NCBI GenBank assembly: GCA_037447605.1
Contig: CM074814.1
Coordinates: 310,001 to 374,000, forward strand
Length of the DNA stretch: 64,000 bases
Direction: 5' to 3'
Source: Zygnema circumcarinatum SAG 698-1b
Lineage: Eukaryota; Plantae; Zygnematophyceae
Part shown: positions 21,997-55,820 of the stretch, one piece after another
Layout: each line of letters begins with the position of its first letter
How positions within the stretch are numbered: the first letter of the stretch is position 1
Position numbers and translations under genes: made by a program
The notes under the pieces: model-generated
What the model saw: the letters and a program-made list of their open reading frames with translations, nothing else
Told to the model about the DNA's origin: nothing
Database searches by the model: none

Positions 21997-23894
21997 CTAA
22001 CGCTGCGGCAAAACCGACCTTGGCGTCCCTTCCTCTCCTGACACGCTGAGCTTCACCCTCTTAGAATGTTTTTCCACCTCCGCCATTAGACAGTTGGTAG
22101 TATTCTTCTCCATCTGTAACGAAGCCCGAGTGATCTCCAATTCCTCATGCATCCTCTTCACTGAGCCATGCAGGGATTCGATCGTCTTGGCCTGATCCTC
22201 TACCTTCTTCTTCTCCGCCATGAGAGCCTTTTCATGGAAGGCCAACATGGCTGAGATAAAACGCGGTTTTGCAGGAAGCCTCCCTCCCAGCAGAGCATGC
22301 TTCACCATCTCCTGCGAGAGCTTAAGACTCTCAAGATTCTCTCCTGCGAGGTGATCGCAGAGCTTCACACGATCATCTTCACTCACATCAGTGTTGTTCA
22401 CCAAAAACATGTCGATCGCTATGTACAAAATGTCGCAATTTTTTCGGGCATTCTTCGGCAGCACTTCACATAATGCATGAAGATTGGCAAGAGTCAACTT
22501 CTTGTCCTCCGCAGCTTTAAGAATGTAAGCATCCGCGAGCTTTCCAGCAGCTATTAAGTTTCCAGAAGCAGCAGTTCCATCGATTGGAAGTTCCTTTGCA
22601 TAGAGAGCGAAAATAGTGCATACGCTTTCTGGATGAAGCGATTTCACTTCCTCAAATCCGACTTGAGGAAGAACCTTTCCAATGCGGCGCTGAATATCAG
22701 AGGCCAATTTTGAGCCCAAGGCTTCGCTGTGCCTCATCAATGTGACGAGATATGAAGGGCTGGGAGGAATGGTAAGTTTCATCTGCTCCGATCTTCCATG
22801 CGCTGACTCACAAGGTTCACATTTAATGTTAGTTAGAGGCCAATCAAGCATTTTCACAAGGTATGTGAGAATTACTTGAAGTTTCATTGCTCCTTCGGTC
22901 GGCGACAACCCTGTGTCGGAAACCATTGTGGAACCATCCTCCTGTATCAAAGGTTCAAACATCCATTTCTTTCCTGCAGAAGCGAGAGAATTCCCTGTTC
23001 TGATAAATGTGACATTGTGTTCCTCAAAAACGGTCAAAAGAGCCTTCAATTGTTCCAATGGCAATGCCGCGACATGTCTGAAGAAGTTCCATGTCTCCGA
23101 AACTCGTTCTAAAGGATCAGGAAGGTGGTCAATGGATTCTGCATAGACTGCAAGTCCCTCACCAACTGTTCCAGTCAAGAAGTCAAGCAGTTAACCAGTC
23201 AGGCTAATCAGTCTAGTTATTTCGTCATGCAGTAAAAAGTAGTTTATTAGAATGTACCGTTCTATCAGTGAGCAGGTCTATATTGCCTGCTCTACTTTCA
23301 GTATAAGGAATCGGTTAACGTTAACAATATCCATAATTCGTACATTGTCACTTAACAATAACAATATAATATGACCTGCTTTTGGAGTTTCATAAAAAAG
23401 TCACCTGAGATGGTCGTTTGGCAGGCGGAGACGATGTCGCTCCCAAGAGTGTGCGCATATTTCCTCACAACCGCATCATTAAGAATCTCCAAGCAGGCTT
23501 TCCAATTCGTATAAACCTCCGCTTTCAAATACCCAACACAAGCGTTGATCAAATTATCCGGAGAAAAATCGTCGGTCATCTCTAAATGCAATGCACCCAA
23601 AAGAGTGTGAGTCACGGAGGTCTTCGGAATGGCTGACGAGACTCCGTAACAGTAGTCTGCAATGGCATGGAACGCCTGCAGCCCCCCGGGAAGCTCGTCG
23701 AGCTCGAGCACTGCCTCATCCTTAAGATGATGAAGCTTCTCCTTCAATTTGGGGCTCCGCGTGAAGAAGGGGAAGCGGTGCAAGCGCAGCTCTTTGCCGC
23801 CGATGCGAACGATTAAGTCGCTGAGTTCTCCGGATAGGCGGAAGGGTGCCCATGGTGACATGGGAAGGGTTAGCTTTGGGGCTATGGCCACCAT
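21997..23894 (-). CDS. Divergent BTB-NPH3 (NRL-like) protein, type A; exons 23894-23405 and 23147-21997; about 546 aa
   Basis: BTB start (SDLIVRIGGKELRLHRFPFFTRS...LPGGLQAFHAIADYCYG). NPH3-type C-terminal block (KLADAYI...LPKNAR..CDILY.AID.FL...DDRVKLC...KLSQE...HA...RLP), then a coiled coil. One phase-1 GT-AG intron. Confidence 0.85.
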
Positions 23895-25951
23895 GGATGG
23901 AGGAGGGAAAGGACTATATGGAAAAGCTATTTCACCTGCAGAGAAAGAGGGAGGGGTAGAAGAAAAGGAGAGAGGAGAGGAGAGATTGAAATGACATACG
24001 ATCTTTAAATGCTCCGCTGCCGATCCCTCCGCCCTTTTCCTTCGTCCTAACAAGGGAGAGACACAAGTGCAACTCCCTCTCACCCTCTCTCTCCCGCCTC
24101 ACCCCGCTCCCCCTCTCCCCTTCAACACCCTCCCCTCTCCATCTCCACTCCCTCGTCCTCTCTCTCCCTCTCCCTCTCCAACTCCCCTCCCACTCCCTCT
24201 TCCTGCCCCTTCTCCCCCGCTCTCCCTTTCCCCCTTCTCTCCCACTTCCTCTTCCCAACGCTCTCCTCCTTTCTCCCTCTCCACCTCCTCTCCCTCTTCC
24301 GTTCCCTCGTCCTCTCCCCATCCCTCTCCTTCTTTCTCCCTCTCCCCATCTCTCTCCCCCTTCCCCTTGCCCTCTCCTGCCCCTCCCTCTCCCTCTCTCT
24401 CTCTCCCTATCTCTCCCTAACTGTCTGTCGTTCCATCTGCAGCCACGGAAGAGCAAAGACAAGATCCTTCCCGAGCCTCTGCCATGGCCAGCAGGTCTTT
24501 GGGGTTTGGAAAAAAGCTGAACCTGCACAGGTACGGAGCGAACGAGGGGCTTTAAGCTTCTAATTTCAATGGCTTTTTGGGTCTTCACAGCCGTTTTCAA
24601 AACGAAAGCAGAAGTGAAGCTGCATGGGAGGGGCTGTGCGTACACAGCTGGCAGCAGCTATGGCGGCAGAAACTCCTCTAGTTCTGAATGCAAAATTTAA
24701 GAAAAAAAAAAAAAAAAAAAAGGGGTTCATTATCAATCCTGTCTTTCAGTCTCCAACTTTGCCTCTTTAGCGCCTTTCATGCTCAAATTTCAAACTCAAA
24801 ATTTTTAACCATTGGACATTATTGGACATTCTAGAGCTTCTGGAGCAGTGTTATGTCACAGGCTCTATGTGTCCAGTCACAATTCCAGTTCAGTCACCAC
24901 TTGCACATGTTGACCAACATGGGAAACTACCTAAAGAAGTCGTACTTCACACGTGCGAACGGAGGGGCGAACACATTGAACATTGTTCCATGGGCCCATG
25001 AGTCCACTCAAAACAACATCAGCAACAACAACAAACTAGCCCCGCCTTCAACTCCTATACAACAACCAATAGCCATTGTCACAAGGGTTCAGAAGGCCCT
25101 ACAAGGGCATGGTGGTGCGCAAATCCACATACGTCCGTAAAGCGGTTGCAGTGTGCCCCCAACGCTCTGAAAATGGAACAACATTGACTGGGACGGTGGT
25201 TAACACGTGCGTCTACATCCAGTAGCCAATGGGAGCCGCACACGTGGCATTGAAAAGTAGGCTCCCATGACATGGAAATGACATGTAGTATTGAGTTCCT
25301 TCAGTTAAGCGTGGAAGGCGGCTTAGCACATGGAACAGTGTGATAACTGAACGGCGAACGGCATGGCGGCCGCTTCACATGATGTGGGTATGTGCGCATG
25401 CGTGTTCCATCGCCATGCCCATAAAAGCCCCCCATGGTCATACAATGTGGCACAACGTCAAAATGAAGCAAAGGCCTGGGAATGGCTATGAGGAAACTTT
25501 CAAAGCATGAAACCTTTTGAGTGGATGTTGAATACAATGCGCTTGCTAGACATGTTAGGTCCATCCAAATTTCGAGCCACGAATGAGAGGCGTGTTGTGC
25601 TCTTTCAAATGACAACACGTACATTCAAAGTTCACTTCCACAACACATAAGCAGCAAAATGCACAAAATTTGTAGTCCATGTATTTTTTCAAAGGAGGTG
25701 CAGTCTTCTAACATGCAGACTCATGGCCCCATAGAAGCTCTTCATCAAGTAGATGCAGCATTGTGAGAACTGCCATGCATGCATGGACTGCCTCAACGCG
25801 TGACCCATCTTCCTCGCCATTGCATGCTCACTTCTAAACTGCGTTCAAAGACCGTCGGTATATAGTGCGAGCCCTCTCCTTCTGCAGCCTCATATCCTAA
25901 AAACCCTAAAAACCTCAAACCTCTATGAGCCTCGCCCCCTTGAAAAAAGGC

Positions 25952-27787
25952 TTAAGGGAGAACCGGATACACCACCGCAGGAATGACTGATTTGCGGACT
26001 CTGAAACCGGGGGTCACGCAGAAGGCGACATTCTCAATGTCACCATTGTCGGGCGAGACCGCGCATGGCACGAGCTCCATCAGAGCAGGGTCAAAGGCAG
26101 CTCCCCTTGCAACCCTAAAGATGGCGGCGGGGGGGTCAAAACTCTGAGCCAACTTGTGCAGTGACCACAACGCTTTACAGAGCGACCAAAGCTTGGCATT
26201 GCTGCGTCCTATGTCGAAAGAATTATCTTCCCAAGATACATTAGCCTGAGTAGCCCGGCACTTCTGATACCTTAGAAAGAGGCGAAGAGCGCAGAATTTC
26301 TTATACAAGAAGGACGATAATATGGCATCTCTCTCTTCAATTGCCCATTGCTCTTCCTTCTTCAGCTCGTTGAAATGCTGAAATGTTTTTTGGCTTCGTT
26401 TCACCTCATCGAGGCATGCTGAAAACCCGTCCGGAGAAAAAACCTCATTCTCAAAGGCTTCAAAGATTATGGCAGCGACTTGCGATTCCAGCACGCACTT
26501 GGTATGCGCAGGGCGACTGAACTTCACTCCTATTTGAAGCAGCTGCAAATTCCGCCACATCATGTTCTGATCACCTCCGCACATGCTTGTAAGCTTTTCT
26601 CGAATATCGGCACAAAAATATCGCAGAGCTTCCCTAACTTTCTCATTCGCTGCCTGAAGATCGTGCGGTTGCGCGAGAGAGCTATCATAGGACCCGCTGA
26701 TGGTGTCTTTGGACGAGACATATTGTTCGAGCATAGAGAGCTTTGAGAGGGTTTGATCCCTCTCCCGCTTTACTCTCTCTCCTTCCGCAAGCGATGCTGC
26801 ACTTTCCGCCTGAGTAGTTGTGAGCAGATTCTGAAGGTTCCGAACCTTCTCTTCAAAATTCCTGACCTCTCCTTTCGCCTTCAAAGTTATTCTCTCGTTT
26901 TGAAGCGCATAGTAGCGTGCTACAGCTTCCTTTTCTTTTTTGTACGCCGTTATCGCTGAAGCGTGAGATTCCTCTTGCTCTTTGATAACCGTTTGGGCAG
27001 CAATCAACTCTTTCTGGAGTTCAGCCACAGCTCTATTCCTGTCCTTCAGCTGTTCTTCCATACACAACAGATTTATCGTTTTCACTTCACTGTCTACGAT
27101 AATCTCGTTTCGAATCATCTCCATGTTCTTTGACACCTGCTTAAGCTCATCTGCGCCCAATTCGACTATTCGGCCCATTTCCTGGCTCTCCTGTCGCCAT
27201 CCATTTCTGTCCATTGTCAACTGTGAGGTTTCCTTTAAGAACACCTCCTCATTTGTAAGCAGAGCCTCCTCCAAATCCTTAACCCTCCTCTCTACCTCCG
27301 AACGGCTCAACTTTAATCGTTCATTCTCTAATTGCACTTGACGACATGCTGCAACTGCTTCCTGTTCTTCATCATCCCTCCATCGCTTTCCGGTTTCCAG
27401 ATTTCGAACGATTACAAAATCTGCCAAAGTATCACCACTCCCTCCTGCACCTTGTTTTGGTTTATCCAGATTCGCATACCCCTGCGACATCCCAACGTTC
27501 CCTCGCCCTCCAAAGAACTTCCCTAAGATGGCGTTCATACTGCTTATAGTTTCTTCTGCTGCATGCTTTTGTTTGTAAGCATGATCAAGAGTCTCCATTA
27601 ACATTGCACGAACTGCAACATGAACAGAAGAAGCATTATCCAAGCACGCGCCATCCGCAAAGTCAGAGAAAACGCACTGCAATCCTACGCTTTGTGAAGA
27701 GCTCCAGTCTCTTCTGAAAGGAAAAATCTGCACAGAAACATTTTGGAATCCGTGCTCCGAGCTTCCCCCGCTGCTCGACCGTGCCAT
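25952..27787 (-). CDS. Coiled-coil protein with GIL1/IRKI-type (GrpE-like) C-terminal domain, copy 1, 611 aa, intronless
   Basis: Long heptad region, then SYDSSLAQP.DL, FEAFENE, LWSLHKLAQSFDPPAAIFRVARGAAFDPALME...VAFCVTPGFRVRKSVIPAVVYP. Confidence 0.8.
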   Translation of the reverse strand: MARSSSGGSSEHGFQNVSVQIFPFRRDWSSSQSVGLQCVFSDFADGACLDNASSVHVAVRAMLMETLDHAYKQKHAAEETISSMNAILGKFFGGRGNVGMSQGYANLDKPKQGAGGSGDTLADFVIVRNLETGKRWRDDEEQEAVAACRQVQLENERLKLSRSEVERRVKDLEEALLTNEEVFLKETSQLTMDRNGWRQESQEMGRIVELGADELKQVSKNMEMIRNEIIVDSEVKTINLLCMEEQLKDRNRAVAELQKELIAAQTVIKEQEESHASAITAYKKEKEAVARYYALQNERITLKAKGEVRNFEEKVRNLQNLLTTTQAESAASLAEGERVKRERDQTLSKLSMLEQYVSSKDTISGSYDSSLAQPHDLQAANEKVREALRYFCADIREKLTSMCGGDQNMMWRNLQLLQIGVKFSRPAHTKCVLESQVAAIIFEAFENEVFSPDGFSACLDEVKRSQKTFQHFNELKKEEQWAIEERDAILSSFLYKKFCALRLFLRYQKCRATQANVSWEDNSFDIGRSNAKLWSLCKALWSLHKLAQSFDPPAAIFRVARGAAFDPALMELVPCAVSPDNGDIENVAFCVTPGFRVRKSVIPAVVYPVLP

Positions 27788-28640
27788 GAAAGCAGCTGTC
27801 CTCCCAAAATGCTCAAAAGGTTATCAAAAAAAAGAAACTATAGCTGCACTGATGATAAAACTGCCAAAAAGGATCGTCGAAAATGCCTAATGCGAAACTA
27901 CGCCTTGCTATAAGGCAATATGAGAGGAACTGGAATTCGTTCCGAGCAGCAGCAGGTCGTAAACTTCCAGAATGCAGTCATGCAGGCCGGCGGAGCCTGC
28001 AGGGCCATGCAGTCGGCCCCCGCCCCTCGCATGTTCTTGGAAGCAGAACGGAAGAGGGCTGAAGAGGTCGGCCTTCGGTTGTTCGCACAACAACAAGCTG
28101 CTCATGACTTCATGGAACATTGTTCGTTTTGAGGTATGGAAGGCCCTAAAGGACGAGTAGAGCGGGCGCTGGCGATGACATTGTTTGGTGAACTTGACGG
28201 ACATTGGCACTCTGTGATGGCTCCCATAACATTGTCAAGTTATCAACTACGTTATCTCCGTAGCGCACCACGCTAGTGCCAACTGTCGTTCAGTGTCACT
28301 GCCGCTCCATGCGCCCTCCAACTGCTGCGCTCCATGTTGGAAATTAACTGCGGTTCTATCGAGATTGGCCGTTCCACTCACACGTGCGAATCGCCCGGCG
28401 GCCAATCAGCGCGCGTCCATGCAGTGCGTTGCAGGCCGAGGGAAGGAAGCCCTCGGACCGCCATGGCTGCACCTTCCAGCACTTCCCTCTGGAGGACCTC
28501 TTCTCTTTTTAAAAAGCTAGCCGGATGTTTTGATTGCAGAAACGAGGCAATATTCTGGTGAGACGGTGGCGTGAAATCATTGCAAGAACAGTTTATTTCT
28601 TCTTTAGTCCATTCGGATCATCAAGGTGAGCAGCTATTCC

Positions 28641-29617
28641 CATGGCAGGGACGGGCAGCAAGCAAAGCGTCGGTGGTAGAGTGCAGAATAACTCGGAAGA
28701 AGGTCATTCAAATAAAGGCGCGTTAACGACGTGTTCACAAGATGTGGGAGGGCTAAAAAATCTCTGTCTCGTCATTTGATACTCAAAACCAAACGCAGTT
28801 TCAGGATCAGAGTCTGAAGGAGACTCTGATGAAATCTATGGAAGAATTTCGTTCAATTCGAGGCAATTGGGAGAAAAGGTTCCGGCTAGTTGAGACGGGT
28901 ATGCAAGAGATCAAGGGGCTGCTGTTGAAATCTGAAAGGATGGGGGGCCTTGAAAAGTCGTCACCGTTGGCAACTCAGTTATCGGGCCTTTCTATTCTCC
29001 TCGTTGCCATAACTTTACTGTACCTTGTATTCTGGATGCGCAATCCTGTTGTCTTCAATGTGACTCTTGAAGGCATCATCGACGAAATCAAGCGTTCACT
29101 GCCTTCTCCTCCGATTTGCCCCACTGCCAATGACCTTCTGCATGAACTGGATGTTTCATACATTCGTTCCCATTGTCCTTCTGTTGAAGAGGTGGTTGCT
29201 GAAGTGAAGCGCTCCCTTCCGCCTCCTCCCATCGTGGGGCCTCTGGGAACATACCTCGCCGTCAGCACAGGTGATTTTTTGGCAACCTCCTCTTGCTTTC
29301 TTTCTTTTGTTTTGAAGATCGCTTGTTTTATCTCACAACTAGTTGATGGTTGTTGAACAGGAAAAGTGAAACAGACCACATCGTACTTCGCTGACAAGGC
29401 TCGCGACTCCACCGGTTACGGACAGTATAAGGTGGGCTAAGATTAATCTTGAGGTTGACATGCAGTGACAGTTTCTTTCCTATTTTCTTTTTGATGTTCG
29501 TGGAGCTGCTTTCTGCTGCCCCTAACAGAGCATCCTTTTCATGGCCAGGCTGGAGAGACCTATGGTCGCCTGTATGACAGAGTTAGCGGTGCTGGATATG
29601 GTCGCCTGCCTGACTAA
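28641..29617 (+). CDS. Chimeric gene or pseudogene: the N-terminus of the GrpE-like family (frameshift and internal deletion upstream of 28829) joined to a transmembrane segment and Pro-rich repeats; putative exons 28829-29270, 29361-29431, 29531-29617
   Basis: 28310-28960 aligns with the promoter and 5' CDS of 31141-32808 and 44325-46112. It then switches to LSILLVAITLLYLVFWM and two KRSLP(S/P)PPI repeats. The GT-AG exons are plausible but unverified. Confidence 0.5.
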
Positions 29618-31140: not shown

Positions 31141-32808
31141 TCAAGTGGCCTCACCATTCGGTTGAGCGAGTGCAGGATACACATGGGAAGGAATGACTGA
31201 TTTTCGAACACGAAAGCCTGGCGATACAGAGAACGCTACTTGCTGCACTCCTCCAATTTCAGACGAGTCGATAGACGACACCAATTTCATAAAAGCAGGG
31301 TCAAATGGAGCTCCCCTTGGAACTCTGAAGATGGAGGCAGGAGGGTCAAAGCTCTGTCCCAGCTTGTGCATTGACCACACCGCTTTGCACAGGGCCATAA
31401 GCTTGGAATTGCTTCTGCTTACATTGAAATAATCTTCAACCCATGCTGGATCATGCCGATTGGCTCCCAGATCTCTCAGAAAGCAGAAAAGGGCCCACAA
31501 TTTGTCATTCACGAAGCTGTTGAAGCGCTCCTCTTTCTCTTCAATCGTCCATCGCTCTTTTTCCTTCAGCTCCTTAAAATGGTGAAAAGCTTCACTGCTT
31601 CGCTTCGTTGGGTCAAGCCAAACAGAAACTCCTGAGGGAGAAAAGCATTCGTTCTCAAAATTGGCAAACATCATGGATGAAATTTGTGCCTCCAACGCGC
31701 ATTTTGCATGTGCGGGCCTGCAAAATTGAACTCCCCACTGAAGCCTTGAAAGAACATGCCACAATTCTTTCTGATTTGCCACCAGCCGAGTGAATTTTAC
31801 TCGAAGTTCAGCACAGTAGCATGTAAGAGCTCTCGAAACTTCATTATTTGCTTCCTGAAGATCATGAGGCTGTGCGAGAGAGCTATCATACGAACCACTC
31901 ATGGTATCCTTTGAGGAGATGTCACGTTCAAGCATGGATAGTTTTGAGAGGGCTTGGTCCTTCTCGGCTTTGAATCTCCCTACGTCCTCACGGGAGGTTT
32001 TCAACTCCAATCGGATATTCCCGAGTTCCACCTCAAGATGACCGACAGTTTTTTGGTACTTCCTCACCATTTCTTTCTCCTTTGAGAGATCTTTTTTGTA
32101 CTGACCTTCTATGGCTTCTCGTTCTTTCTTATACTTTTCCATGGATAATCGATCTCGCTCTTCTTGCTCCTTGGGGATATTTTGCAATTGAATCATTATC
32201 ACACCTATTTTTTCATTCAAGTCCGTCAGCTGCTTCTTCATACATGCGCGATCAGAGTTTTCAGTCTTTTTCTCGAATCTCACTGCCTGCTCCATCCTTT
32301 CAAATTTCGACAGCAGCCCCTTGATCTCTTGCATACCCGTCTCAAATAGCTGGCCCATTCCGTCCCACTTGTCTCGACTTGAACGAAGTTCTTCAATAGC
32401 TGTCATCAGAGTCTCCAGACTCTGAACCTGAAACTGCGTTTGCGAATCTGGACGACTCCTTTCCAACAGCTCGTTCTGAGATGGAAATCCATGATGAGCT
32501 TCCTGTTCTTCCTTTCCCTTGCCCTTTTTCCCGCCTCTTGTAGCATTGATTCCTGTTAACCATGGGATGAATCTCATGACGCCGCCTCCCCCATCTCGAT
32601 CAGATTGATTTGGATTGACACCATCCAAACTCGGCCGGTCCAAACTGATTTGAACATGGCTTTGAGCATCAGATGACGAGACAGGGGTTTTTTTTCGCAC
32701 TCCCACATCTTGTGAACACGTCGATAACGCGCCTTTATTTGAAAGACCTTCTTCCGAGTTATTCTGCACTCTGCCCGCCACGCTTGGCTTGCTGCTTGTT
32801 TCCCCCAT
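31141..32808 (-). CDS. Coiled-coil + GIL1/IRKI-type (GrpE-like) C-terminal protein, copy 2, 555 aa
   Basis: Intact ORF ending IFRVPRGAPFDPAFM...VAFSVSPGFRVRKSVIPSHVYP. Confidence 0.82.
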   Translation of the reverse strand: MGETSSKPSVAGRVQNNSEEGLSNKGALSTCSQDVGVRKKTPVSSSDAQSHVQISLDRPSLDGVNPNQSDRDGGGGVMRFIPWLTGINATRGGKKGKGKEEQEAHHGFPSQNELLERSRPDSQTQFQVQSLETLMTAIEELRSSRDKWDGMGQLFETGMQEIKGLLSKFERMEQAVRFEKKTENSDRACMKKQLTDLNEKIGVIMIQLQNIPKEQEERDRLSMEKYKKEREAIEGQYKKDLSKEKEMVRKYQKTVGHLEVELGNIRLELKTSREDVGRFKAEKDQALSKLSMLERDISSKDTMSGSYDSSLAQPHDLQEANNEVSRALTCYCAELRVKFTRLVANQKELWHVLSRLQWGVQFCRPAHAKCALEAQISSMMFANFENECFSPSGVSVWLDPTKRSSEAFHHFKELKEKERWTIEEKEERFNSFVNDKLWALFCFLRDLGANRHDPAWVEDYFNVSRSNSKLMALCKAVWSMHKLGQSFDPPASIFRVPRGAPFDPAFMKLVSSIDSSEIGGVQQVAFSVSPGFRVRKSVIPSHVYPALAQPNGEAT

Positions 32809-34485: not shown

Positions 34486-34593
<108 letters not shown>

Positions 34594-34598
34594 GAGGA

Positions 34599-35954: not shown

Positions 35955-37852
35955 ATGGCGGCCATAGCCCAAAAGCTAATCCTTCCCATGTCACCATGGG
36001 CACCCTTCCGCCTATCTGGAGAACTCAGAGACGTAATCGTTCGCATCGGCAGCAAAGAGCTGCGCTTGCACCGCTTCCCCTTCTTCACGCGGAGCCCCAA
36101 ATTGAAGGAGAAGCTTCATCATCTTAAGGATGAGGCAGTGCTCGAGCTCGACGAGCTTCCCGGGGGGCTGCAGGCGTTCCATGCCATTGCAGACTACTGT
36201 TACGGAGTCTCGTCAGCCATTCCGAAGACCTCCGTGACTCACACTCTTTTGGGTGCATTGCATTTAGAGATGACCGACGATTTTTCTCCGGATAATTTGA
36301 TCAACGCTTGTGTTGGGTATTTGAAAGCGGAGGTTTATACGAATTGGAAAGCCTGCTTGGAGATTCTTAATGATGCGGTTGTGAGGAAATATGCGCACAC
36401 TCTTGGGAGCGACATCGTCTCCGCCTGCCAAACGACCATCTCAGGTGACTTTTTTATGAAACTCCAAAAGCAGGTCATATTATATTGTTATTGTTAAGTG
36501 ACAATGTACGAATTATGGATATTGTTAACGTTAACCGATTCCTTATACTGAAAGTAGAGCAGGCAATATAGACCTGCTCACTGATAGAACGGTACATTCT
36601 AATAAACTACTTTTTACTGCATGACGAACTAACTAGACTGATTAGCCTGACTGGTTAACTGCTTGACTTCTTGACTGGAACAGTTGGTGAGGGACTTGCA
36701 GTCTATGCAGAATCCATTGACCACCTTCCTGATCCTTTAGAACGAGTTTCGGAGACATGGAACTTCTTCAGACATGTCGCGGCATTGCCATTGGAACAAT
36801 TGAAGGCTCGTTTGACCGTTTTTGAGGAACACAATGTCACATTTATCGCAACAGGGAACTCCCTTGCTTCTGCAGGAAAGAAATGGATGTTTGAACCTTT
36901 GATACACGAGGATGATTCCACAATGGTTTCCGACGCAGGGTTGTCTCCGACCGAAGGAGCAATGAAGCTTCAAGTAATTCTCACATACCTTGTGAAAATG
37001 CTTGATTGGCCTCTAACTAACGTTAAATGTGAACCTTGTGAGTCAGCGCATGGAAGATCGGAGCAGATGAAACTTACCATTCCTCCCAGCCCTTCATATC
37101 TCGTCACATTGATGAGGCACAGCGAAGCCTTGGGCTCAAAATTGGCCTCTGATATTCAGCGCCGCATTGGAAAGGTTCTTCCTCAAGTCGGATTTGAGGA
37201 AGTGAAATCACTTCATCCAGAAAGCGTATGCACTATTTTCGCTCTCTATGCAAAGGAACTTCCAATCAATGGAACTGCTGCTTCTGGAAACTTAATAGCT
37301 GCTGGAAAGCTCGCGGATGCTTACATTCTTAAAGCTGCGGAGAACAAGACGTTGACTCTTGCGAATCTTCACGCTCTATGTGGAGTGCTGCCAAAGAATG
37401 CCCGAAAGAATTGCGACATTTTGTACAAAGCGATCGACATATTTTTGGTGAACAACACTGATGTGAGTGAAGATGATCGTGTGAAGCTCTGCGATCACCT
37501 CGCAGGAGAGAATCTTGAGAGTCTTAAGCTCTCGCAGGAGATGGTGAAGCATGCTCTGCTGGGAGGGAGGCTTCCTGCAAAACCGCGTTTTATCTCAGCC
37601 ATGTTGGCCTTCCATGAAAAGGCTCTCATGGCGGAGAAGAAGAAGGTAGAGGATCAGGCCAAGACGATCGAATCCCTGCATGGCTCAGTGAAGAGGATGC
37701 ATGAGGAATTGGAGATCACTCGGGCTTCGTTACAGATGGAGAAGAATACTACCAACTGTCTAATGGCGGAGGTGGAAAAACATTCTAAGAGGGTGAAGTT
37801 CAGCGTGTCAGCAGAGGAAGGGACGCCAAGGTCGGTTTTGCCGCAGCGTTAG
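35955..37852 (+). CDS. Divergent BTB-NPH3 (NRL-like) protein, type A, near-identical inverted duplicate; exons 35955-36444 and 36702-37852; about 546 aa
   Basis: Same exon lengths (490 and 1151 nt) as 21997-23894, with only scattered substitutions. Confidence 0.85.
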
Positions 37853-47351: not shown

Positions 47352-49486
47352 TTAAAACTCAAATTTCATCGTTTTCTGAAACTTGCATATTCCATTTTTC
47401 TTCGCTCTACCTATCACTTCGATCACGCTCCTTCCAAAGAACATTTCCACTTCGATTTCTCGGTTATCCAAAATATTGTAGTTCTTTGGTAGCTGCAGAA
47501 CGAATTTGCCCTCCTCTTGTACACCTTCATCAGTGACGTACTTCGGGGAACTTTCGGTTGTACTATACAAAACAATTTCTGAATGTCCTTGATTAGCAAG
47601 TTCTGGCACAAACAAAACATGCTTGAAACTTTCGTCTTCTTTTACTTTCTGATGAACTTCCACGAAACGTACGAAAATATCGTCGCACACAGGCAGAAAA
47701 AATGGCGGAAAAGGACGGGGTATGATGCTGAGCTTATCCTCCGGATCGGAGGGCTGAAATATCCTTGAAGCGCTAATTCCGTACGTCTTCTGGAGGCACC
47801 TTGAACCTGGTCGCAATTCAGGTCTAAGTGCATATAACGCGGCACCGACACAGACTGCACCGCCGGGATTGGGCGGCCGCAGGACTTTAAGCTCCTGAAA
47901 CAGTTCCTTCATGCGGTTAAAAAGATATTCTGACGAGGAAAAGCCGCCGACTGCAACAACGTGTTGCACTTTCGGGGCAGCTTCAAGCTGATGGGCAATA
48001 AGGTTCAAAATTTTCTCCACCACGGGATCGAAAAACCCTCTCACTTCATCAGGCGAAATTTTAATCTCATCGAAACTGCATGGAGGATTCTCGTTCTTAA
48101 AGTCGTAGTGGGTCCAATCATCGGCAAGTTCAGATGGTATTGAAATCAGACAGACTTCCCTTGAAGACGTGCTGTTGTATACATCAAAAACTGGAAGTCA
48201 GGAAATTTTTGATAGATCTCACTTATCATCATTTAGCTATGGCATCTTGACTATTGGCAGTGCCCCAAATCAATCGCCGACACAACTGAGTAGACTGTAA
48301 GAAAAGAGAAATAACCAACTAATTTCAATGTCAATTAAATTACAGCAGAAAAAGCGCCACTCGGATGCAAACGTTATCTCTCTTCTTAAAGGAAAGAACG
48401 TGCTTACTCGAAATTGCATTTATAATCCTCCCACTGTCGTAAAAGCGCAATCTCTGTAGTTGGATACGATTCAATAAACTTTGTCCAGCAGCCAATCTTT
48501 GACTTCACATGTTCCAAGAAATTGCTGTCAACATCAATACTCCCACACAACTCCCCAATGCTTCTTATCACCTCCCTCGTCCTCCCTCCCTCCTGCAACT
48601 CCTGCACAACGATATCAACTGTACCCCCCCCCGCATCAACCACTAGGAACTGGTCGCCCTCAGAAAGATGGAAATCTTTGTCTTCTTGGCAGTATATGGA
48701 GGCAGCTTCAGGCTCAAGTACAATATGGAGTGGAAAAGGACTTCCCCTTCCTGAGTTGCAGCCTTCCTCCTGAACAAGTCCAGCATCGTTTACGATTTTT
48801 CTCATTCTCTGCTTCGCTTTATCGTCCCACATTGCTGGAACTGTCACGGCCCACTCAATATCTGAATTTGTAATGTGTTTGCCATATTGTTGCTTCACGT
48901 CTTTGAGGACAAATTCTCCAAGAAACTTCAAGTAGTCTGATATCGCTTTATCTACCGAAAGCCCATCAGGAAGGTCCGGAATCTTCGACTTGTCGCTCTC
49001 CCGCGGTGCCAAATGCAGCTTGAAAAGCTTCACGAGGTATAACTTTCCAGCTGTAGAATTTTCCAATTTCTCACTTTCATACGGACTTTCTACAGAACCT
49101 TTCTTCTTCTTGACCCGCTCAACCGCCGCAAAATAGCGAAGAACTGCAGGCCACCCCCAGTCCCTTGCCACGTACTCTCCTGTCTCACTTTTTTCGTATA
49201 GAATCACCGTTGCCGTTTTACAATACGGCTTTTTCAGAAATTCACCTTGTCCTAGCCAATCTTCAAACATCCACCATTTTTCAGGCTGGCTTTTTGATAT
49301 ATAGGTGAACCCTGAGAAGGTCGTCCCGAAATCGAGACCAACAACAACGCGGGATTCGTTGAACGAGGAAACTTCTGCTGATGTCGAACCCCTTTCACTC
49401 TCTCCCCCTGCTCCTCTATTGCCTCCCGGTTTTCCTCCAACTTTGCCCTTACCCTTCCCCTTCCCTTTAAGTTTATATTTCCCCAT
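47352..49486 (-). CDS. Atypical Hsp70 (HSPA12-type), copy 2; exons 49486-48408 and 48171-47352; about 632 aa
   Basis: GLDFGTTFSGF, AVTVPAMW, LEPEAAS, VVDAGGGTVD and VGGFS motifs. Phase-2 intron in the same position as in copy 1; exon 2 starts align (GPNYNNECRIEIP vs DTSSREVCLISIP). Confidence 0.88.
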
Positions 49487-50339: not shown

Positions 50340-51770
50340 ATGGCAAAAACAATTTTCAGCAAAATTTTCCTTCCTTTTTCTCCTCCAAAGACAGAAAAAT
50401 CTTCCCAAAACAACGACCAGCCGCAGCAGAGTTCCACCAAAGCGCAGGATTTTTGTCACAGTGAGGGTTCACCTTCAACCGTGAATCCAACCGAGGGTTC
50501 ATCTGCAAATGAGCAGCAGAACCAAGCTCCCAGTTGCGAGGAATCCATGGACAGAAAATCGCCGGAGATTCAAGATTTAAAACAAAAGGGATGTGGAATG
50601 GGTGTAATATGTGGAAAGAGTTTGGTGGATGGTTTCCAAAGAAGAGGAAAAATCAAGGCAGGAAGTAAAAGAGAGAAAGAGATTGCTGCTGCAAATGACA
50701 GAATTCGGATAGAGAATGAAAACTTGACTTGCTCACAGCTACAGAAGCAGGTTGAGGAACAGGAGGAGATGCTGCTGAAACTCGGAAATCACATGAAGGA
50801 GAAAGAAACAAGAGTTCAGATTCTCCGTAAAGAGAAACGTGATCTCAAACGAGAGCAGGAAGAAGCGAGAAAGAAAATCAAGAGGATTTTGGAGTTGAAG
50901 GGAAGTGAAACAGAGGAAGACAAGGCAGACTTGTGTGCAGAAGTAGAAAAGTTAAAAAGTGAGAGAGACTTTGCCCTTTCAAAACTCACCGTACTTGAAA
51001 ACGATGTCGCTTCCAGGGACACTCTTAGTGGTTCTTATGACATCCTTCTCGCACATCCCGAAGACCTCCACGTGGCGATGGCAAAAATCGACACATTTCT
51101 GAAGTCTTTTAGTTTAGAGTTGCGAGAGAAGCTCATATTAAATTTCAAAGGAGATTTGTGGCAGCTCCTTGAAAGGCTTGCAAAGGGAGCAGAGTTTGTT
51201 CGTCCTGCACACGCCAATTATGCGCTGCATGCAGCAATTTCTGCAGTAATGTTTGCGAATTTTGAAAACGAATGTTTTCTTCCTGCGGGGCCGACATTAT
51301 ACGTTGATGCGAAGGAGCGCAGCAGTGAAAGTTTCAGGATCTTCACGGAGCTTAAGACAGAAGAAGGATGGAACGATGCAAAGACAAAGGTTCAATTTTT
51401 TGAGTTTCTTGAAAGCAAACGCAGTGGTTTGATTCAAGTATTGACGAGTGCAAACGGTTTAGGGCTTCAGGCTAGCCCAGAAGAAGTTGTGGGAGAATTC
51501 GGAGTTCAGAGAGAGAATCTCAAACTAGTGTCTCTTTGTAAGGCAGTATGGTCACTTCACAAGTTGGCGATGAGCTTCAATCCACCTGCTTCCATATTTA
51601 GGGTTTCTAGAGGAGTTGAATTTGATCCTGCACAGATGAGTTGGGTTCCTGTCATCGACTCATGCGAAAATGAAACTCTAAAGAGAGTGGCCTTCTGCGT
51701 CAATCCGGGATTTCGTGTCAGGAAATCGGTGATTCCAGCTTCAGTATATCCGGAGATTGCTAAGATTTGA
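50340..51770 (+). CDS. Coiled-coil + GIL1/IRKI-type (GrpE-like) C-terminal protein, copy 4, about 476 aa from the first in-frame ATG
   Basis: SGSYDILLAHPEDL, FANFENECF, VWSLHKLAMSFNPPASIFRVSRGVEFDPAQM...VAFCVNPGFRVRKSVIPASVYP. Confidence 0.8.
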   Translation: MAKTIFSKIFLPFSPPKTEKSSQNNDQPQQSSTKAQDFCHSEGSPSTVNPTEGSSANEQQNQAPSCEESMDRKSPEIQDLKQKGCGMGVICGKSLVDGFQRRGKIKAGSKREKEIAAANDRIRIENENLTCSQLQKQVEEQEEMLLKLGNHMKEKETRVQILRKEKRDLKREQEEARKKIKRILELKGSETEEDKADLCAEVEKLKSERDFALSKLTVLENDVASRDTLSGSYDILLAHPEDLHVAMAKIDTFLKSFSLELREKLILNFKGDLWQLLERLAKGAEFVRPAHANYALHAAISAVMFANFENECFLPAGPTLYVDAKERSSESFRIFTELKTEEGWNDAKTKVQFFEFLESKRSGLIQVLTSANGLGLQASPEEVVGEFGVQRENLKLVSLCKAVWSLHKLAMSFNPPASIFRVSRGVEFDPAQMSWVPVIDSCENETLKRVAFCVNPGFRVRKSVIPASVYPEIAKI

Positions 51771-53247
51771 AGCTGGTAGAGGCATCTCTTGCAGAGGGTC
51801 AAAACTGTGGGCTCTGAGGGTCATTCAACAGAGTAGGCATCACTTTTTGTGCGGACTGAGAAAGAGACTGAGGAATTTGTGCTTTTGGTTTTGACCCAGG
51901 AAGGACTAATCGATCTTCCAAACTACTTTTGAAAACTGAAAGGACAGAGAAGACGAGCAACATAGCGTCCTATGCTGTTGCCCATAATTCCTTTGAGTGA
52001 AGCCTTTTCTTTCTGCTTTTGCGTGTTGTCTGCTGCATTTGTGCTTTTGCCAATGATGACCACCTGGCTGTTTGTGAAAGACTTTTTCCTTTATACATGT
52101 CACAGTAGCTGCGAGCGTTCAGCTCCAAGGTAAGGATAGTTACGCAACCAATGTTCTTTCTACGGGTAATCAAAATTCTGGATTGCAGTATGAGTGAATT
52201 TATCTGAGACAACCCCAACAAGACTTCGCCTGCTTCGTCTTCTTCGCATAAATGCATGAAGTTAATCCTCTCTATTGTTCCAATCGCGACGAGTCACGTG
52301 GACACTGATGCGTATGTGGCGAGTCGCCATTGGCTGATTGCTCGAGTCTTGTTCGCAAGTTTGAGGAAGCCCCCCACCCCCCCGCTTCCCCCCCCCCCTT
52401 CTCCACCCACCCCATTTTTCCCCTTCTCTCCCCCACCTCTCCTCCCCAACCTCTTCCCCACCCCCCCCCTCTCTCTCCCCGGCCACTCTTCCTCCCTCCC
52501 TCTCCCCCCTCCCTCTCTCCTCGCCCTCTCCTCCCCCCTCCTCTCCACCCCCCCCGCCCCCTCTCTCCCCGCCCCCTCTTCCCCCCCCCNNNNNNNNNNT
52601 CTCTCTCCACTCCTCTTCCCCCCCCCCCTCTCTCCCCCCACCTGGAAAGAGAGAGATTTTGGCCACCTTCTTTTTTCTTGAGGGACTTGGAAGGCGCGCA
52701 GCGGTTCGGACATGGCATGACAAATGGCGGAGGGCATGTGAGGGCGGATGGGACCCTTCCCTCTTGAAGGGAACTTCCCTCCATTTGGTCCTTCGCTTTC
52801 CTCTCTCCATTCGTGCTTGCACTCTCCCCCGCCTCCACTTCAAGACCTTTCCATGGTCAAACTTGCCTCATTGCTGGAAGGATGAATCTCCAAGGTTGGA
52901 AACCGAGTCAAAAAAAATTGCTTTTTCCTTTTTCATTTTAAGCCTCCCAAACAAAGTTCTTCAATTTTCAAATCTTTAACGGTCAAATAGCGTACAAGGA
53001 ACCATTCTGGCCATAACAAATTCTACATCCTTTTGGTAATAATTTTGTTTTTTTTTAATTTTCAGCCAAAAGGAAAGCTCATCAGCATCCCTGGTGCAAA
53101 CATGCAAGCATGGTGCAGCCCAAGGGCTGCTAGAAAGGCCGTTCCATGTGTAGCAAGCAGGGGACGATACTGACGGACATAGACTAGACGTTGGCGCCGT
53201 TACAGTTCAGTTATGCTGGATCTGAGTGTTCGATGGAGCCTTCCTCG

Positions 53248-54024: not shown

Positions 54025-55565
54025 ATGGCCACTCCTGCATCGCCATGGACCTCTTTCCGCCAATCGGCAGAACTTCACGACGTGCGCGTTCTCGTCGACA
54101 GCCAATGCTTTTTGCTTCATCGCTTCCCTTTGTTCTCACGGAGCAAAAAATTGAAGGAAGACCTTTATTTTCAGAAGGCGGCAGCCATGGCGGAGCTGCA
54201 GCTGGAGCACCTTCCAGGCGGTGCGGATGCGTTCCACACCGTTGCTGATTACTGTTACGGAATCCCCCCAAGTTTCACGGCGACCTCGGCTGCTCACACT
54301 CTAATGGCTGCTCTGCAGTTGGAGATGACGGACGAATATTCTCCTCCAAAGAATTTGGTGGATGTTTGTACTGCATTTCTGCAGGCGGAAGTATATAATG
54401 ACTGGCAGGCCTGCCTGCTGGTGCTCAGGGATTCTGTGGTGAGGGAATACAAGCACTCCCTTGGGAAGGAGATCGTTTCCGCTTGCAATAAGACGATTTC
54501 AGGTGAGTTTTGCTTTTTTCTGGCAGTCTTGATTAAAATTTTAACCTACTATCATGCATTTCCTGTGCTAAATTTTCGTTTCTCATGCTTCCATCTCTAA
54601 GCACTAATTGACCTTAAAGATCACATGCCGTAGACATATGCTGATATTCTCTTTTCTTATTTACTTGTGAATCACCCGAATGTTTGCGAGGCTGAATTGC
54701 AGAATATGCGGCATCCATCGACAAGCTCGACGATCCAACGGAGCGAGTTTCGAAGTCATGGAACCTCTTAAACAAGGTTGTGGCGCTACCGTTGGAGGCT
54801 CTTGAGGAACTTTTGAGTGCGTTTGAGGAACATGAAGTCACGTTCATTGGAGCAGGAAACTCCCTCTCGTCTACGGGAAAGGAATGGATGTTTGTACCGG
54901 CGGTAGACGATCCAGATCTCACAATGTTTTCAGACTTGCAAATTTCTCCGGCCGAGGGGAGAAAGCAGCTTCAAGCACTTTTGGGTTACCTTGTGAAGAT
55001 GCTCAGTACGCCCACAAGTGTGGCAAAGGAAGGTTGTGGACCCACTCTTCATCCTAATCCTTCATACCTTGTAACTTTATTGAGGCACAGCCAACTCAAG
55101 GACTCGAAATTGACATTAGAGTTGTACCGCCGTGTCTCAAAGGTGCTTCCTATAACCAATTTTGAGGACCTGAAATCGTTAGATCAGGAAACTGTCTGCA
55201 CTCTCTTCACTCTCTATTCGAATGAGATTCAAGCTGATGAAGCAGAAGCTTCCGAGGACTTGATCGCAGCTGCAAAGCTTGCTGATTCTTACCTTCTTTG
55301 GGCCGTACAAGAGGTTGAGAGCTTCACTCTGGATGATCTTCACATAATGTGTGAAACTCTACCCAAGTTTGCACGATTACGTTGCGATGATTTATATAAG
55401 GCTATTGACACGTTTTTGACGAAGAACTCTAAAGTGAGCCAAGAGGATCGTGTGAGGCTTTGTGATAATCTCGTGGGAGACAATCCGAAGATTCTCAAGC
55501 TCTCTGAAGAGATGATATTGCATGCATTGGAGGAGGGAAGAGTTCCGACCGAGGGGAAGTTGTAG
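54025..55565 (+). pseudogene. BTB-NPH3 type B (inverted paralogue of the fusion gene's N-terminal half), truncated by an LTR insertion; exons 54025-54502 and 54703-55565
   Basis: Co-linear with 42559-41030 up to PTEGK. The sequence switches to TGTAG... at 55561 and a stop follows at once. Confidence 0.8.
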
Positions 55566-55810: not shown

Positions 55811-55820
55811 NNNNNNNNNN

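What the first reader, a model, noticed from the sequence alone, without database searches (positions are those of the whole stretch)
21997..55565. Candidate new module: atypical Hsp70 + GrpE-like coiled-coil proteins + BTB-NPH3 adaptors, clustered, paired head-to-head and fused
Seen in the sequence: about 34 kb contain four BTB-NPH3 genes (one fused, one truncated), four stand-alone coiled-coil genes with the same C-terminal domain, one chimeric derivative, and one HSPA12-type Hsp70. No unrelated gene was recognised among them. The pairing recurs: GrpE-like2/BTB-A (32808 vs 35955), BTB-fusion/GrpE-like3 (42559 vs 44325) and Hsp70/GrpE-like4 (49486 vs 50340) are all divergent. Established: DnaK works with GrpE as its exchange factor, and NPH3/RPT2-like BTB proteins are CUL3 substrate adaptors. 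Inference: these three families form one pathway, for example a chaperone-gated ubiquitination or surveillance system. Its turnover and shuffling resemble immune or allorecognition clusters. 21997-51770 lies in one gap-free contig, so the linkage is unlikely to be a scaffolding artefact.
Basis: partly seen in the sequence, partly recalled or inferred. Interest (0 to 1): 0.9.

Follow-up and report, generated by a model that had tools for sequence, protein, structure and literature searches.

The report
Atypical Hsp70, GrpE-like, BTB-NPH3 cluster
A young, duplicating gene cluster in a bryophyte-like plant genome puts an unusual Hsp70 ATPase next to coiled-coil proteins whose tail folds like the Hsp70 cofactor GrpE, and next to BTB-NPH3 scaffold proteins; the same Hsp70/GrpE-like pairing recurs in other bryophyte genomes, which points to a candidate partner for an Hsp70 class of unknown function.

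Summary
Window 21997-55565 contains three BTB-NPH3 genes (one cut short by a Copia element), four coiled-coil genes ending in a GIL1/IRKI C-terminal domain, one BTB-NPH3::GIL1_IRKI_C fusion, one gene fragment and one HSPA12-like Hsp70. A second Hsp70 copy lies upstream at 4238-6181. Recent inverted and direct segmental duplications (80-95% nt identity) built the cluster, so the repeated "divergent pairs" are not independent events.

Evidence from outside the window supports two pairwise links:
- **Hsp70/GIL-like adjacency.** HSPA12-like genes lie within 2-6 kb of GIL-like genes at 4 of 11 other loci examined (two in Calypogeia, one in Riccia fluitans, one metagenome contig), at only 25-40% protein identity.
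- **NRL/GIL-like link.** A second NPH3::GIL1_IRKI_C fusion exists in another organism's transcripts. A 2026 preprint places IRKI1 in the proximity set of an NRL protein.

No other locus holds all three families. None of 80 metagenomic Hsp70-like loci has a GIL-like neighbour. Nothing supports a ubiquitination or immune role.

The parts
4238..6181 (+). Hsp70b: second HSPA12-like Hsp70 gene (two exons), outside the finding's range
   Evidence: Pfam HSP70 33.8 bits. 52% identical to Hsp70a over exon 1. tblastn matches both exons.
21997..24083 (-). NRL#1: BTB-NPH3 gene (BTB exon 23352-24083, NPH3 exon 21997-23178)
   Evidence: Pfam BTB 25.9 bits and NPH3 63.2 bits. Inverted 95% copy of NRL#2. Open spliced models exist.
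25955..27787 (-). G1: coiled-coil protein (611 aa) with a C-terminal GIL1/IRKI (MIEAP/GrpE-like) domain
   Evidence: Pfam GIL1_IRKI_C 36.8 bits. Its C-terminal 245 aa was the AF2 target, pLDDT 90.3.
28600..28942 (+).
   Evidence: tblastn. nt similarity to the 5' regions of G2 and G3. No Pfam hit on the ORF.
31144..32808 (-). G2: coiled-coil GIL1_IRKI_C protein (555 aa)
   Evidence: Pfam 37.5 bits. 88% nt identity to G3.
35955..37852 (+). NRL#2 ('BTB-A'): BTB-NPH3 gene
   Evidence: Pfam BTB 25.6 bits and NPH3 60.9 bits. 96% aa identity to NRL#1.
40167..42559 (-). Fusion gene: BTB (exon 1, 42082-42559), 200-nt GT..AG intron (41882-42081), then NPH3 joined directly to a complete GIL1_IRKI_C-type domain (exon 2). 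The spliced ORF is 731 aa. The recombination joint lies at about 40889-40905, exactly at the start of the C-terminal domain, so no coiled coil is retained.
   Evidence: Pfam NPH3 66.6 bits and GIL1_IRKI_C 37.8 bits in one ORF. Parental similarities. Open spliced frame. Contigs from RNA-type runs cross the joint with 0 mismatches, and one contig carries the splice (with the caveat).
44325..46109 (+). G3: coiled-coil GIL1_IRKI_C protein, divergent from the fusion gene
   Evidence: Pfam 33.6 bits plus a sub-threshold GrpE hit (E 0.005, GrpE profile positions 115-156). Almost no matching contigs in four runs.
47355..49486 (-). Hsp70a: HSPA12-like atypical Hsp70 (about 630 aa; exon 1 49486-48408, intron of about 236 nt, exon 2 ending at 47355)
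   Evidence: Pfam HSP70 26.5 bits. ATPase motifs are visible. Open spliced models. Nearest Atlas clusters are atypical Hsp70s of fungi and molluscs.
50340..51767 (+). G4: earliest-branching GIL1_IRKI_C copy, head-to-head with Hsp70a (0.85 kb between the start codons)
   Evidence: Pfam 31.5 bits. Tree. Sequence.
52372..52643 (.). C/CT-rich simple tract that contains the assembly gap 52590-52599; intergenic
   Evidence: Read directly. N runs located.
54025..55565 (+). NRL#4: BTB-NPH3 gene cut short beside a Copia element; closest relative of the fusion's BTB-NPH3 part (91% nt)
   Evidence: Pfam BTB 22.7 bits and NPH3 57 bits; RVT_2 at 55967-56719. tblastn match stops at aa 307 of 393.

Best explanation
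This is a real, lineage-specific, fast-duplicating cluster in a land-plant genome. The organism is probably a bryophyte whose proteome is not in public protein sets.

The hub is a subfamily of GIL1/IRKI/COST1-type proteins that lack DUF641. Each has an N-terminal coiled coil and a 245-aa C-terminal domain. The core of that domain (three helices plus a small beta head) folds like the Hsp70-binding part of GrpE. The whole domain matches the animal MIEAP domain.

Proposed mechanism (inferred, not shown). The coiled-coil dimer places its GrpE-like head on the nucleotide-binding domain of the neighbouring HSPA12-like ATPase and tunes or recruits it. GrpE does this with DnaK, and the family member COST1 does something comparable with the RHD3 GTPase. 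The divergent BTB-NPH3 (NRL) proteins are physical partners of the same hub, as the Arabidopsis NRL protein SIB1 is of IRKI1. In the fusion gene the dimerising BTB-NPH3 part replaces the coiled coil.

Shown: gene content, duplication history, the fold resemblance, the recurrence of the Hsp70/GIL-like neighbourhood, a second NPH3::GIL fusion, and exon-limited contigs of the window's fusion in RNA-type runs. Inferred: any binding, nucleotide exchange or CUL3 involvement.
For: - **Families.** Pfam hits.
- **Duplication map.**
- **Family placement.** A profile of the C-terminal domain finds 323 relatives, all GIL1/IRKI-type. The best are from liverworts, Selaginella, ferns and Sphagnum, and none scores better than 8e-29. 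The five window copies form one clade.
- **Neighbourhood.** Calypogeia L001: GIL-like gene, then Hsp70-like gene 5.6 kb downstream. Calypogeia L003: an unannotated Hsp70-like gene head-to-head, 6.3 kb away. Riccia fluitans L008: an Hsp70 fragment 3.8 kb away. Metagenome contig L010: head-to-head, 2 kb apart, with the same intron position. Identities to the window are only 25-33% (GIL-like) and 31-40% (Hsp70). The linked Hsp70s fall in one clade, and the two Calypogeia copies are sisters, as are their GIL-like partners' clades.
- **Fusions.** P0171/P0029 (744 aa; NPH3, coiled coil, GIL1_IRKI_C) was assembled from three SRA runs and is 25-33% identical to the window's fusion.
- **Transcription.** Contigs of X20, X25 and X9 cover the fusion's exons, cross the joint with 0 mismatches, and are absent from the intron and intergenic DNA.
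- **Literature.** COST1's C-terminal domain sits beside the RHD3 GTPase domain, is needed for binding, and COST1 stimulates GTP hydrolysis (PMC13189119). IRKI1 occurs in the proximity sets of SIB1 (NRL2) (bioRxiv 10.64898/2026.08.17.745269). HspA12 function is described as unknown (PMC13580251).
Against: - The Pfam GrpE hits are below threshold. Profiles of the family do not retrieve GrpE from PDB sequences.
- Seven of the 11 other GIL-like loci lack an Hsp70-like gene within 10 kb.
- None of 80 metagenomic Hsp70-like loci has a GIL-like neighbour.
- The same genome reportedly pairs HSPA12-like genes with WWE/PARP genes.
- No NRL gene flanks any GIL-like locus elsewhere.
- The fusion's C-terminal domain evolves at dN/dS of about 0.9-1.0 against G2 and G3, as expected for relaxed constraint.
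- G3 has almost no matching contigs in the runs where the fusion does.
- The only spliced contig joins the fusion's exon 1 to 105 nt that carry NRL#4-type letters at 6 of 6 variable sites, so it may be an assembly path switch between paralogues.
- Canonical GIL1/IRKI proteins occur in angiosperms. By my recollection angiosperms lack HSPA12-like genes, so the head need not be Hsp70-specific.
Confidence: 0.45

Rival explanations
1. Chance neighbourhood amplified by segmental duplication. One accidental juxtaposition of NRL, GIL-like and Hsp70-like genes in a transposon-rich region was copied several times. The fusion is a young, decaying by-product, and the families have no functional link.
For: Recent duplications at 80-95% identity explain most of the repeated pairs. 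Copia elements flank the cluster and truncate one copy. The fusion's C-terminal domain has dN/dS of about 1. G3 has almost no matching contigs in the runs laid. A fragment is present. An earlier follow-up on another HSPA12 cluster of this genome reached this kind of verdict. The reverse test on 80 Hsp70-like loci was negative.
Against: The Hsp70/GIL-like adjacency recurs at four other loci from at least three assemblies, at 25-40% protein identity, which is far older than the local duplications. If Hsp70-like genes occurred once per Mb, about 0.2 would be expected in the roughly 220 kb of flank examined, and four were found (Poisson p of about 8e-5; my arithmetic, with an assumed density). A second NPH3::GIL fusion exists elsewhere. 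Older paralogue pairs are under purifying selection, dN/dS 0.12-0.26.
Confidence: 0.25
2. One reading: a three-component surveillance or immune-like system in which the Hsp70/GrpE-like pair gates CUL3-dependent ubiquitination through the BTB-NPH3 adaptors, diversifying like immune or allorecognition loci.
For: All three families sit together and are shuffled and fused here. Recent copies show raised dN/dS of 0.4-1.0, and the BTB exons of NRL#1 and NRL#2 show 2.3, though on very few substitutions. HSPA12 genes are massively expanded in bivalves (PMC13580251). BTB domains of NRL proteins are known CUL3 adaptors (established knowledge, not tested here).
Against: No other locus has all three families. 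There is no clear positive selection. No immune-type domain (NB-ARC, TIR, LRR) is present in the interval. Nothing tested bears on ubiquitination. Published NRL/IRKI data point to cell-polarity scaffolds, not immunity.
Confidence: 0.12
3. The GIL-like head regulates a different NTPase (for example an RHD3-like GTPase, as COST1 does) or simply anchors a cortical or polarity scaffold with NRL proteins. The Hsp70-like neighbour then only shares a bidirectional promoter or a duplication history.
For: COST1-RHD3. IRKI-SIB1 proximity and polar localisation. Fungal structural relatives fused to an MMR_HSR1 GTPase. Most GIL1/IRKI family members have no Hsp70-like neighbour.
Against: The best solved-structure match is specifically the Hsp70 cofactor GrpE. 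Three of five linked loci are head-to-head pairs, and the adjacency has been retained over deep divergence.
Confidence: 0.15

Closest known systems
GIL1 / IRKI / COST1 family (Pfam GIL1_IRKI_C PF24994, usually with DUF641 PF04859)
   Same: The C-terminal domain is above Pfam threshold in all five copies. The whole ~245-aa C-terminal region aligns to family members across land plants, and the AF2 model superposes on Arabidopsis GIL1 and IRKI (TM 0.73-0.74). Like COST1, the architecture is a coiled coil followed by a C-terminal globular domain.
   Different: No DUF641 hit in any window copy. The copies form their own clade, at most about 33% identical to any database protein. They are clustered with, and once fused to, NRL genes, and paired with an atypical Hsp70.
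GrpE / GrpEL1 nucleotide-exchange factors of DnaK-type Hsp70
   Same: The helices plus beta head of the model give the best matches in the PDB, about 100-111 aligned residues covering E. coli GrpE residues about 82-195. Sub-threshold Pfam GrpE hits fall on the same beta head. A long N-terminal coiled-coil region precedes the domain. The gene neighbour is an Hsp70-family ATPase.
   Different: Pfam GrpE score is 17 bits against a cut-off of 25.8. Sequence identity is 11-16% in the six VIA-align GrpE/GrpEL1 alignments. There are extra N-terminal helices shared with MIEAP, not GrpE. The partner would be an HSPA12-like protein, not a DnaK-type Hsp70. No activity is known.
MIEAP (SPATA18) domain, PF16026, and uncharacterised fungal relatives
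   Same: This is the nearest non-plant fold family. Foldseek E is 4e-4 to 8e-3 over about 230 residues, and Atlas TM is 0.58-0.70.
   Different: No detectable sequence similarity. The organisms and known biology differ (MIEAP acts in mitochondrial quality control). No paper in the searched library links MIEAP with GrpE or HSPA12.
HSPA12A/B-type atypical Hsp70s
   Same: Divergent Hsp70 NBD with intact phosphate-binding and adenosine motifs. No recognisable Hsp70 substrate-binding domain. The nearest Atlas clusters are atypical Hsp70s of fungi and molluscs, including 'HSP70 12B-like'.
   Different: Orthology to animal HSPA12 is not shown. This is a plant lineage with a conserved two-exon structure.
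NPH3/RPT2-like (NRL) proteins, especially SIB1/NRL2 of the SOSEKI polarity network
   Same: BTB plus NPH3 architecture. In Arabidopsis, IRKI1 is found in the proximity sets of SIB1, which parallels the clustering and fusion seen here.
   Different: NPH3 scores are very low (57-67 bits), so these are divergent members. One copy carries the GIL1_IRKI_C domain in the same polypeptide. Localisation and CUL3 binding are unknown.

Membership tests
GIL1/IRKI family | C-terminal GIL1_IRKI_C domain (PF24994) above the gathering score | tested here: met
   31.5-37.8 bits against a cut-off of 27 in G1-G4 and the fusion.
GIL1/IRKI family | N-terminal DUF641 domain (PF04859) | tested here: not met
   No DUF641 hit at E<=0.01 in any window copy. 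It is present in canonical relatives such as Selaginella GIL1.
GrpE | Sequence membership: Pfam PF01025 at or above the gathering score | tested here: not met
   Best score is 17.0 bits against a cut-off of 25.8. There are 9 sub-threshold hits among 118 members. Family profiles do not find GrpE among PDB sequences.
GrpE | Fold: helical-bundle helices followed by a small beta-sheet head | tested here: met
GrpE | Dimer through a long N-terminal helix | not tested
   The heptad-rich N-terminal halves can be read, but no oligomer prediction was possible.
GrpE | Binds an Hsp70 NBD and accelerates nucleotide release | not testable with these tools
   This needs multimer modelling or biochemistry.
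HSPA12-type Hsp70 | Hsp70-type nucleotide-binding domain with intact ATPase motifs | tested here: met
   Pfam HSP70 26.5 and 33.8 bits against a cut-off of 20.6. DFGTT and DAGGGTVD motifs are invariant in alignment A5.
HSPA12-type Hsp70 | No canonical Hsp70 substrate-binding domain or lid | tested here: met
   The C-terminal exon has no Hsp70 SBD hit in Pfam and no PDB sequence hit.
HSPA12-type Hsp70 | Specific relationship to animal HSPA12A/B rather than to other atypical Hsp70s | tested here: inconclusive
   Atlas feature search: the top clusters are unnamed atypical Hsp70s of fungi and molluscs (0.95); '12B-like' is at rank 75 (0.89).
NRL (NPH3/RPT2-like) | N-terminal BTB plus central NPH3 domain | tested here: met
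   BTB 22.7-26.4 bits (cut-off 20.5) and NPH3 57-66.6 bits (cut-off 27) in four genes.
NRL (NPH3/RPT2-like) | CUL3 binding or substrate-adaptor activity | not testable with these tools
   Established for NPH3 in Arabidopsis (from my own knowledge). Nothing here bears on it.
Immune or allorecognition-type diversifying cluster | Positive selection or hypervariability and presence/absence polymorphism | tested here: inconclusive
   dN/dS is 0.12-0.67 for most pairs, about 1 for the fusion's C-terminal domain, and 2.3 for one BTB pair on very few changes. Differences between runs in the share of words held cannot be told apart from differences in coverage.

The most novel reading that the evidence does not exclude
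The C-terminal domain of plant GIL1/IRKI/COST1 proteins, the animal MIEAP domain and their fungal relatives form one eukaryote-wide family derived from, or convergent on, the GrpE head. This family acts as a dimeric regulator of NTPase domains. The bryophyte gene pairs found here preserve its original client, the HSPA12-type Hsp70. That would give HSPA12 proteins, whose function is still unknown, a cognate cofactor, and would give NRL proteins a chaperone-linked partner.
Probability: 0.2. Interest if true: 0.85.

Novelty: new variant of a known kind. Interest (0 to 1): 0.62.

Why it matters
- **HSPA12-type Hsp70s.** A 2026 review describes them as mechanistically untested and of unknown function. 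A recurring neighbour with a GrpE-like head is a concrete partner that can be cloned and tested.
- **The GIL1/IRKI/COST1 family.** The COST1 authors explicitly asked for non-plant counterparts to be sought from a structural perspective. The MIEAP and GrpE resemblance found here answers that call, if it holds.
- **NRL proteins.** Two independent NPH3::GIL1_IRKI_C fusions give genomic support to the NRL-IRKI association seen by proximity labelling.
- **Limits.** Everything mechanistic remains inference from modest structural scores and a patchy gene neighbourhood.

Tried and rejected
- **Word-indexed protein searches.** G1 (whole, and residues 370-611) found nothing. P0171 found only its own cluster.
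- **First AF2 run.** With only the five paralogues it was unusable, pLDDT 43.
- **Profiles against PDB sequences.** Profiles A2 and A3 did not retrieve GrpE.
- **Metagenome scans with the GIL-like profile.** The narrower alignment gave no confirmed locus.
- **Metagenome scan with the Hsp70 profile.** It gave 80 loci, none with a GIL-like domain in its flanks. Many contigs are short or are probably fungal or bacterial, so this shows the pairing is not general. It does not show that the pairing is absent in bryophytes.
- **Neighbours of distant Hsp70-like loci.** Pfam on L024, L035, L043 and L064 showed no GrpE, MIEAP or J-domain partner.
- **Literature.** No paper in the library links DUF641 or GIL1 with GrpE, HSPA12 with MIEAP, or MIEAP with GrpE. 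GIL1 plus NPH3 co-occur only incidentally. The SRA runs that hold the second fusion could not be traced to an organism.
- **P0171 N-terminus.** It was compared with the BTB exon. Only the segment after the BTB aligns (E 0.002), so a BTB in that fusion is not shown.
- **Rejected idea.** The three divergent pairs are not independent observations, because duplication explains much of their recurrence.

Full report
**What is there**

The window is eukaryotic: compact genes with few introns, about 48% G+C, and Copia elements.
- BTB plus NPH3 occurs at 24083-21997(-), 35955-37852(+) and 54025-55565(+).
- GIL1_IRKI_C ends four stand-alone ORFs: G1 27787-25955(-), G2 32808-31144(-), G3 44325-46109(+) and G4 50340-51767(+).
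- One ORF (41846-40167, -) carries both NPH3 and GIL1_IRKI_C, and a BTB exon lies just upstream (42559-42047).
- An Hsp70-like gene lies in two exons at 49486-47355(-).

tblastn adds a G3-like fragment at 28600-28942 and a second Hsp70-like gene at 4238-6181, which is 52% identical and outside the given range. NRL#4 stops at residue 307 of 393, next to a Copia reverse-transcriptase ORF. A protein-kinase gene lies between Hsp70b and the cluster.

**The assembly gap**

N runs lie at 6412, 14165, 52590 and 55811. The gap at 52590-52599 sits inside a C/CT-rich simple tract that continues on both sides. It is in intergenic DNA between G4 and NRL#4, and no frame crosses it. Only the linkage of NRL#4 depends on it.

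**How the cluster arose**

Self-comparison shows the following.
- 21573-25290 is an inverted copy of 38283-33622 (90-95% identity). NRL#1 and NRL#2 are therefore twins.
- G2 and G3 are 88% identical, in inverted orientation.
- The fusion's 3' half (39719-40889) is an 88% direct copy of G2 (30728-31887).
- The fusion's 5' half (41020-42666) is a 91% inverted copy of NRL#4.

The fusion is therefore a recent recombinant. Its joint (about 40889-40905) falls exactly at the first residues of the conserved C-terminal domain. BTB-NPH3 has replaced the coiled coil and left a complete domain. The spliced frame is open for 731 aa, with a 200-nt GT..AG intron.

In the tree of the C-terminal domain the five window copies form one clade. 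G4 branches first, then G1, then G2, G3 and the fusion. Older pairs are under purifying selection (dN/dS 0.12-0.26). G2 against G3 gives about 0.6. The fusion's C-terminal domain gives about 0.9-1.0.

The repeated 'divergent pairs' are thus partly copies of each other and cannot be counted as independent evidence.

**Transcription**

Contigs of three runs (X20, X25, X9) cover the fusion's exons. They cross the NPH3/GIL joint without a mismatch and are absent from the intron and the intergenic DNA. G3 is almost uncovered.

One X9 contig carries the splice 41881|42082. Its exon-1 part matches the fusion at 633 of 633 positions. Its 105 nt of exon 2 carry NRL#4-type letters at all six differing sites. 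It may therefore be an assembly switch between paralogues. The splice site is real for this NRL pair, but it is not strictly proven for the fusion's own exon 2.

X9 also holds 57% of the sampled words of Hsp70a.

**What the coiled-coil proteins are**

Word-indexed searches failed. A profile of the 245-aa C-terminal region, run against 1.84 billion representatives, found 323 relatives. None scored better than 8e-29. The named ones are GIL1, IRKI or DUF641 proteins of Calypogeia, Riccia, Selaginella, Ceratopteris, Sphagnum, Physcomitrium and Cryptomeria.

The genome's own proteins are evidently not in these collections. The window copies lack DUF641.

**Is the domain GrpE-like?**

Sequence evidence:
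- Pfam GrpE gives sub-threshold hits on the last ~45 residues. For G3 the hit is E 0.005, on GrpE profile positions 115-156 of 165, which is the beta head.
- GrpE is the only foreign family that recurs across the family: 9 of 118 members, best E 0.0033.

Structural evidence:
- An AF2 model built on 118 sequences is confident, with pLDDT 90.3 and pTM 0.89.
- The four best Foldseek PDB matches are GrpEL1 chains. M. tuberculosis, Geobacillus and E. coli GrpE rank further down.

These scores are modest, and the family profiles do not pull GrpE out of PDB sequences. I rate a GrpE-like fold at about 0.7. Homology to GrpE is less certain.

Over its full length the domain is closer to the animal MIEAP domain and to uncharacterised fungal proteins. 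The searched library holds no paper that connects these families.

**The Hsp70**

- Both copies pass Pfam's HSP70 threshold weakly.
- They keep the DFGTT and DAGGGTVD motifs.
- They match solved Hsp70 NBDs only at E >= 1e-4. Mortalin is the best match.
- The C-terminal exon matches nothing.
- The nearest Atlas clusters are atypical Hsp70s of fungi and molluscs, including one named '12B-like'.

'HSPA12-like' is a fair description. Orthology to animal HSPA12 is unproven.

**Does the pairing recur elsewhere?**

I fetched 11 genomic loci around GIL-like relatives and searched their flanks (±10 kb) by tblastn. Four have an Hsp70-like gene or fragment of the same type.

| Locus | Source | Arrangement |
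|---|---|---|
| L001 | Calypogeia | tandem, 5.6 kb |
| L003 | Calypogeia | unannotated gene, head-to-head, 6.3 kb |
| L008 | Riccia fluitans | Hsp70 fragment, 3.8 kb |
| L010 | 125-kb metagenome contig | head-to-head, 2 kb, same intron position |

Identities to the window are 25-33% for the GIL-like domain and 31-40% for the Hsp70. These are therefore old relatives, not copies of this locus.

Seven loci have no Hsp70-like neighbour. They include Sphagnum and the canonical Selaginella GIL1.

If Hsp70-like genes occurred once per Mb, about 0.2 would be expected in the roughly 220 kb of flank examined (Poisson p of about 8e-5 for four). Even at one per 200 kb, p is about 0.03. This is my own arithmetic, and the density is assumed, not measured.

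All linked Hsp70s fall in one clade. The two Calypogeia copies are sisters, which mirrors their GIL-like partners.

The reverse test is negative. None of 80 metagenomic Hsp70-like loci has a GIL-like domain nearby. The Hsp70 family evidently has many partners, or none, and the pairing is specific to one subfamily.

**The NRL link**

No NRL gene lies near any of the other GIL-like loci. However, a database protein (P0171/P0029, 744 aa) combines NPH3, a coiled coil and GIL1_IRKI_C. It was assembled independently from three SRA runs as contigs of about 2.5 kb, and it is 25-33% identical to the window's fusion. The window's fusion is a recent recombinant, so the two fusions arose separately.

Published work gives independent support.
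- IRKI1 appears in the proximity-labelling sets of SIB1 (NRL2). IRKI2 shares SIB1's lateral polar localisation (bioRxiv 10.64898/2026.08.17.745269).
- COST1, a DUF641 family member, forms a 2:2 complex with the RHD3 GTPase. In the authors' AlphaFold3 model its C-terminal domain lies beside the GTPase domain; by pull-down that region is needed for binding, and COST1 stimulates hydrolysis (PMC13189119). This is a precedent for the family's C-terminal domain acting on an NTPase domain.

**Verdict**

The GIL-like proteins are a plausible hub with two kinds of partner, an HSPA12-like ATPase and NRL scaffolds. A single three-part pathway, ubiquitination and an immune role remain speculation.

The GrpE-like reading and the recurring Hsp70 neighbourhood appear to be new relative to the searched literature, and both can be tested directly.

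Noticed in passing
window 12920-14164 and 14261-15505: Two stretches are 100% identical over 1245 nt on either side of the N gap at 14165-14174. This is probably an assembly duplication artefact, not a real repeat.
   Followed up: no
window about 8821-15792 (- strand): A multi-exon protein-kinase gene lies between Hsp70b and the cluster. The kinase core exon is at 8821-9186 (Pkinase 75 bits). Weak N-lobe hits fall at the ends of ORFs 12880-14136 and 14227-15792, inside a 56-58% G+C block.
   Followed up: partly
window 43500-43900: A short stretch between the fusion gene and G3 has a contig word depth of 350-3000 in all four runs, with many loose ends. It looks like a highly repeated and/or highly expressed element.
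   Followed up: no
window 8310-8725, 12490-12793, 16045-16425, 19652-20036, 24073-24429, 35451-35775, 39076-39409, 52372-52643: A family of C/CT-rich low-complexity tracts, 70-99% alike, recurs upstream of or between genes. They create spurious long ORFs on both strands, and one hosts the assembly gap.
   Followed up: partly
window 50-1630, 55522-57149, 60646-61360, 62664-63416: Copia-type retroelement pieces (RVT_2, gag zinc knuckle) flank the cluster. One abuts the truncated NRL#4.
   Followed up: partly
L003:1991-3703 (Calypogeia fissa GCA_965154635.1, CBCUJL010000036.1): A two-exon HSPA12-like gene is present in the DNA but not among the called genes of the public annotation.
   Followed up: partly
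L008:19346-20327 (Riccia fluitans): A second, degraded GIL-like copy on the minus strand lies about 8 kb from P0014. An XH-domain gene sits between P0014 and the Hsp70 fragment.
   Followed up: no
proteins P0077, P0124, P0090; AFDB clusters A0A7J6XF52 and Atlas row 6: The GIL1_IRKI_C-type domain also occurs fused to other domains: SMC_N/AAA (Physcomitrium), DUF641 plus OTU protease, an S-acyltransferase-annotated protein, and in basidiomycetes an MMR_HSR1 GTPase. One case sits behind an integrase fragment and is probably a mis-call. The S-acyltransferase case is notable because PAT19-22 associate with IRKI in the polarity preprint.
   Followed up: no
alignment A5 (window, L003, L010): The intron between the two Hsp70 exons sits at the same position, after '...K-C/Y-x-F', in the window copies, Calypogeia L003 and metagenome L010. 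The closest unlinked metagenome clade (L015-L021) is intronless.
   Followed up: partly
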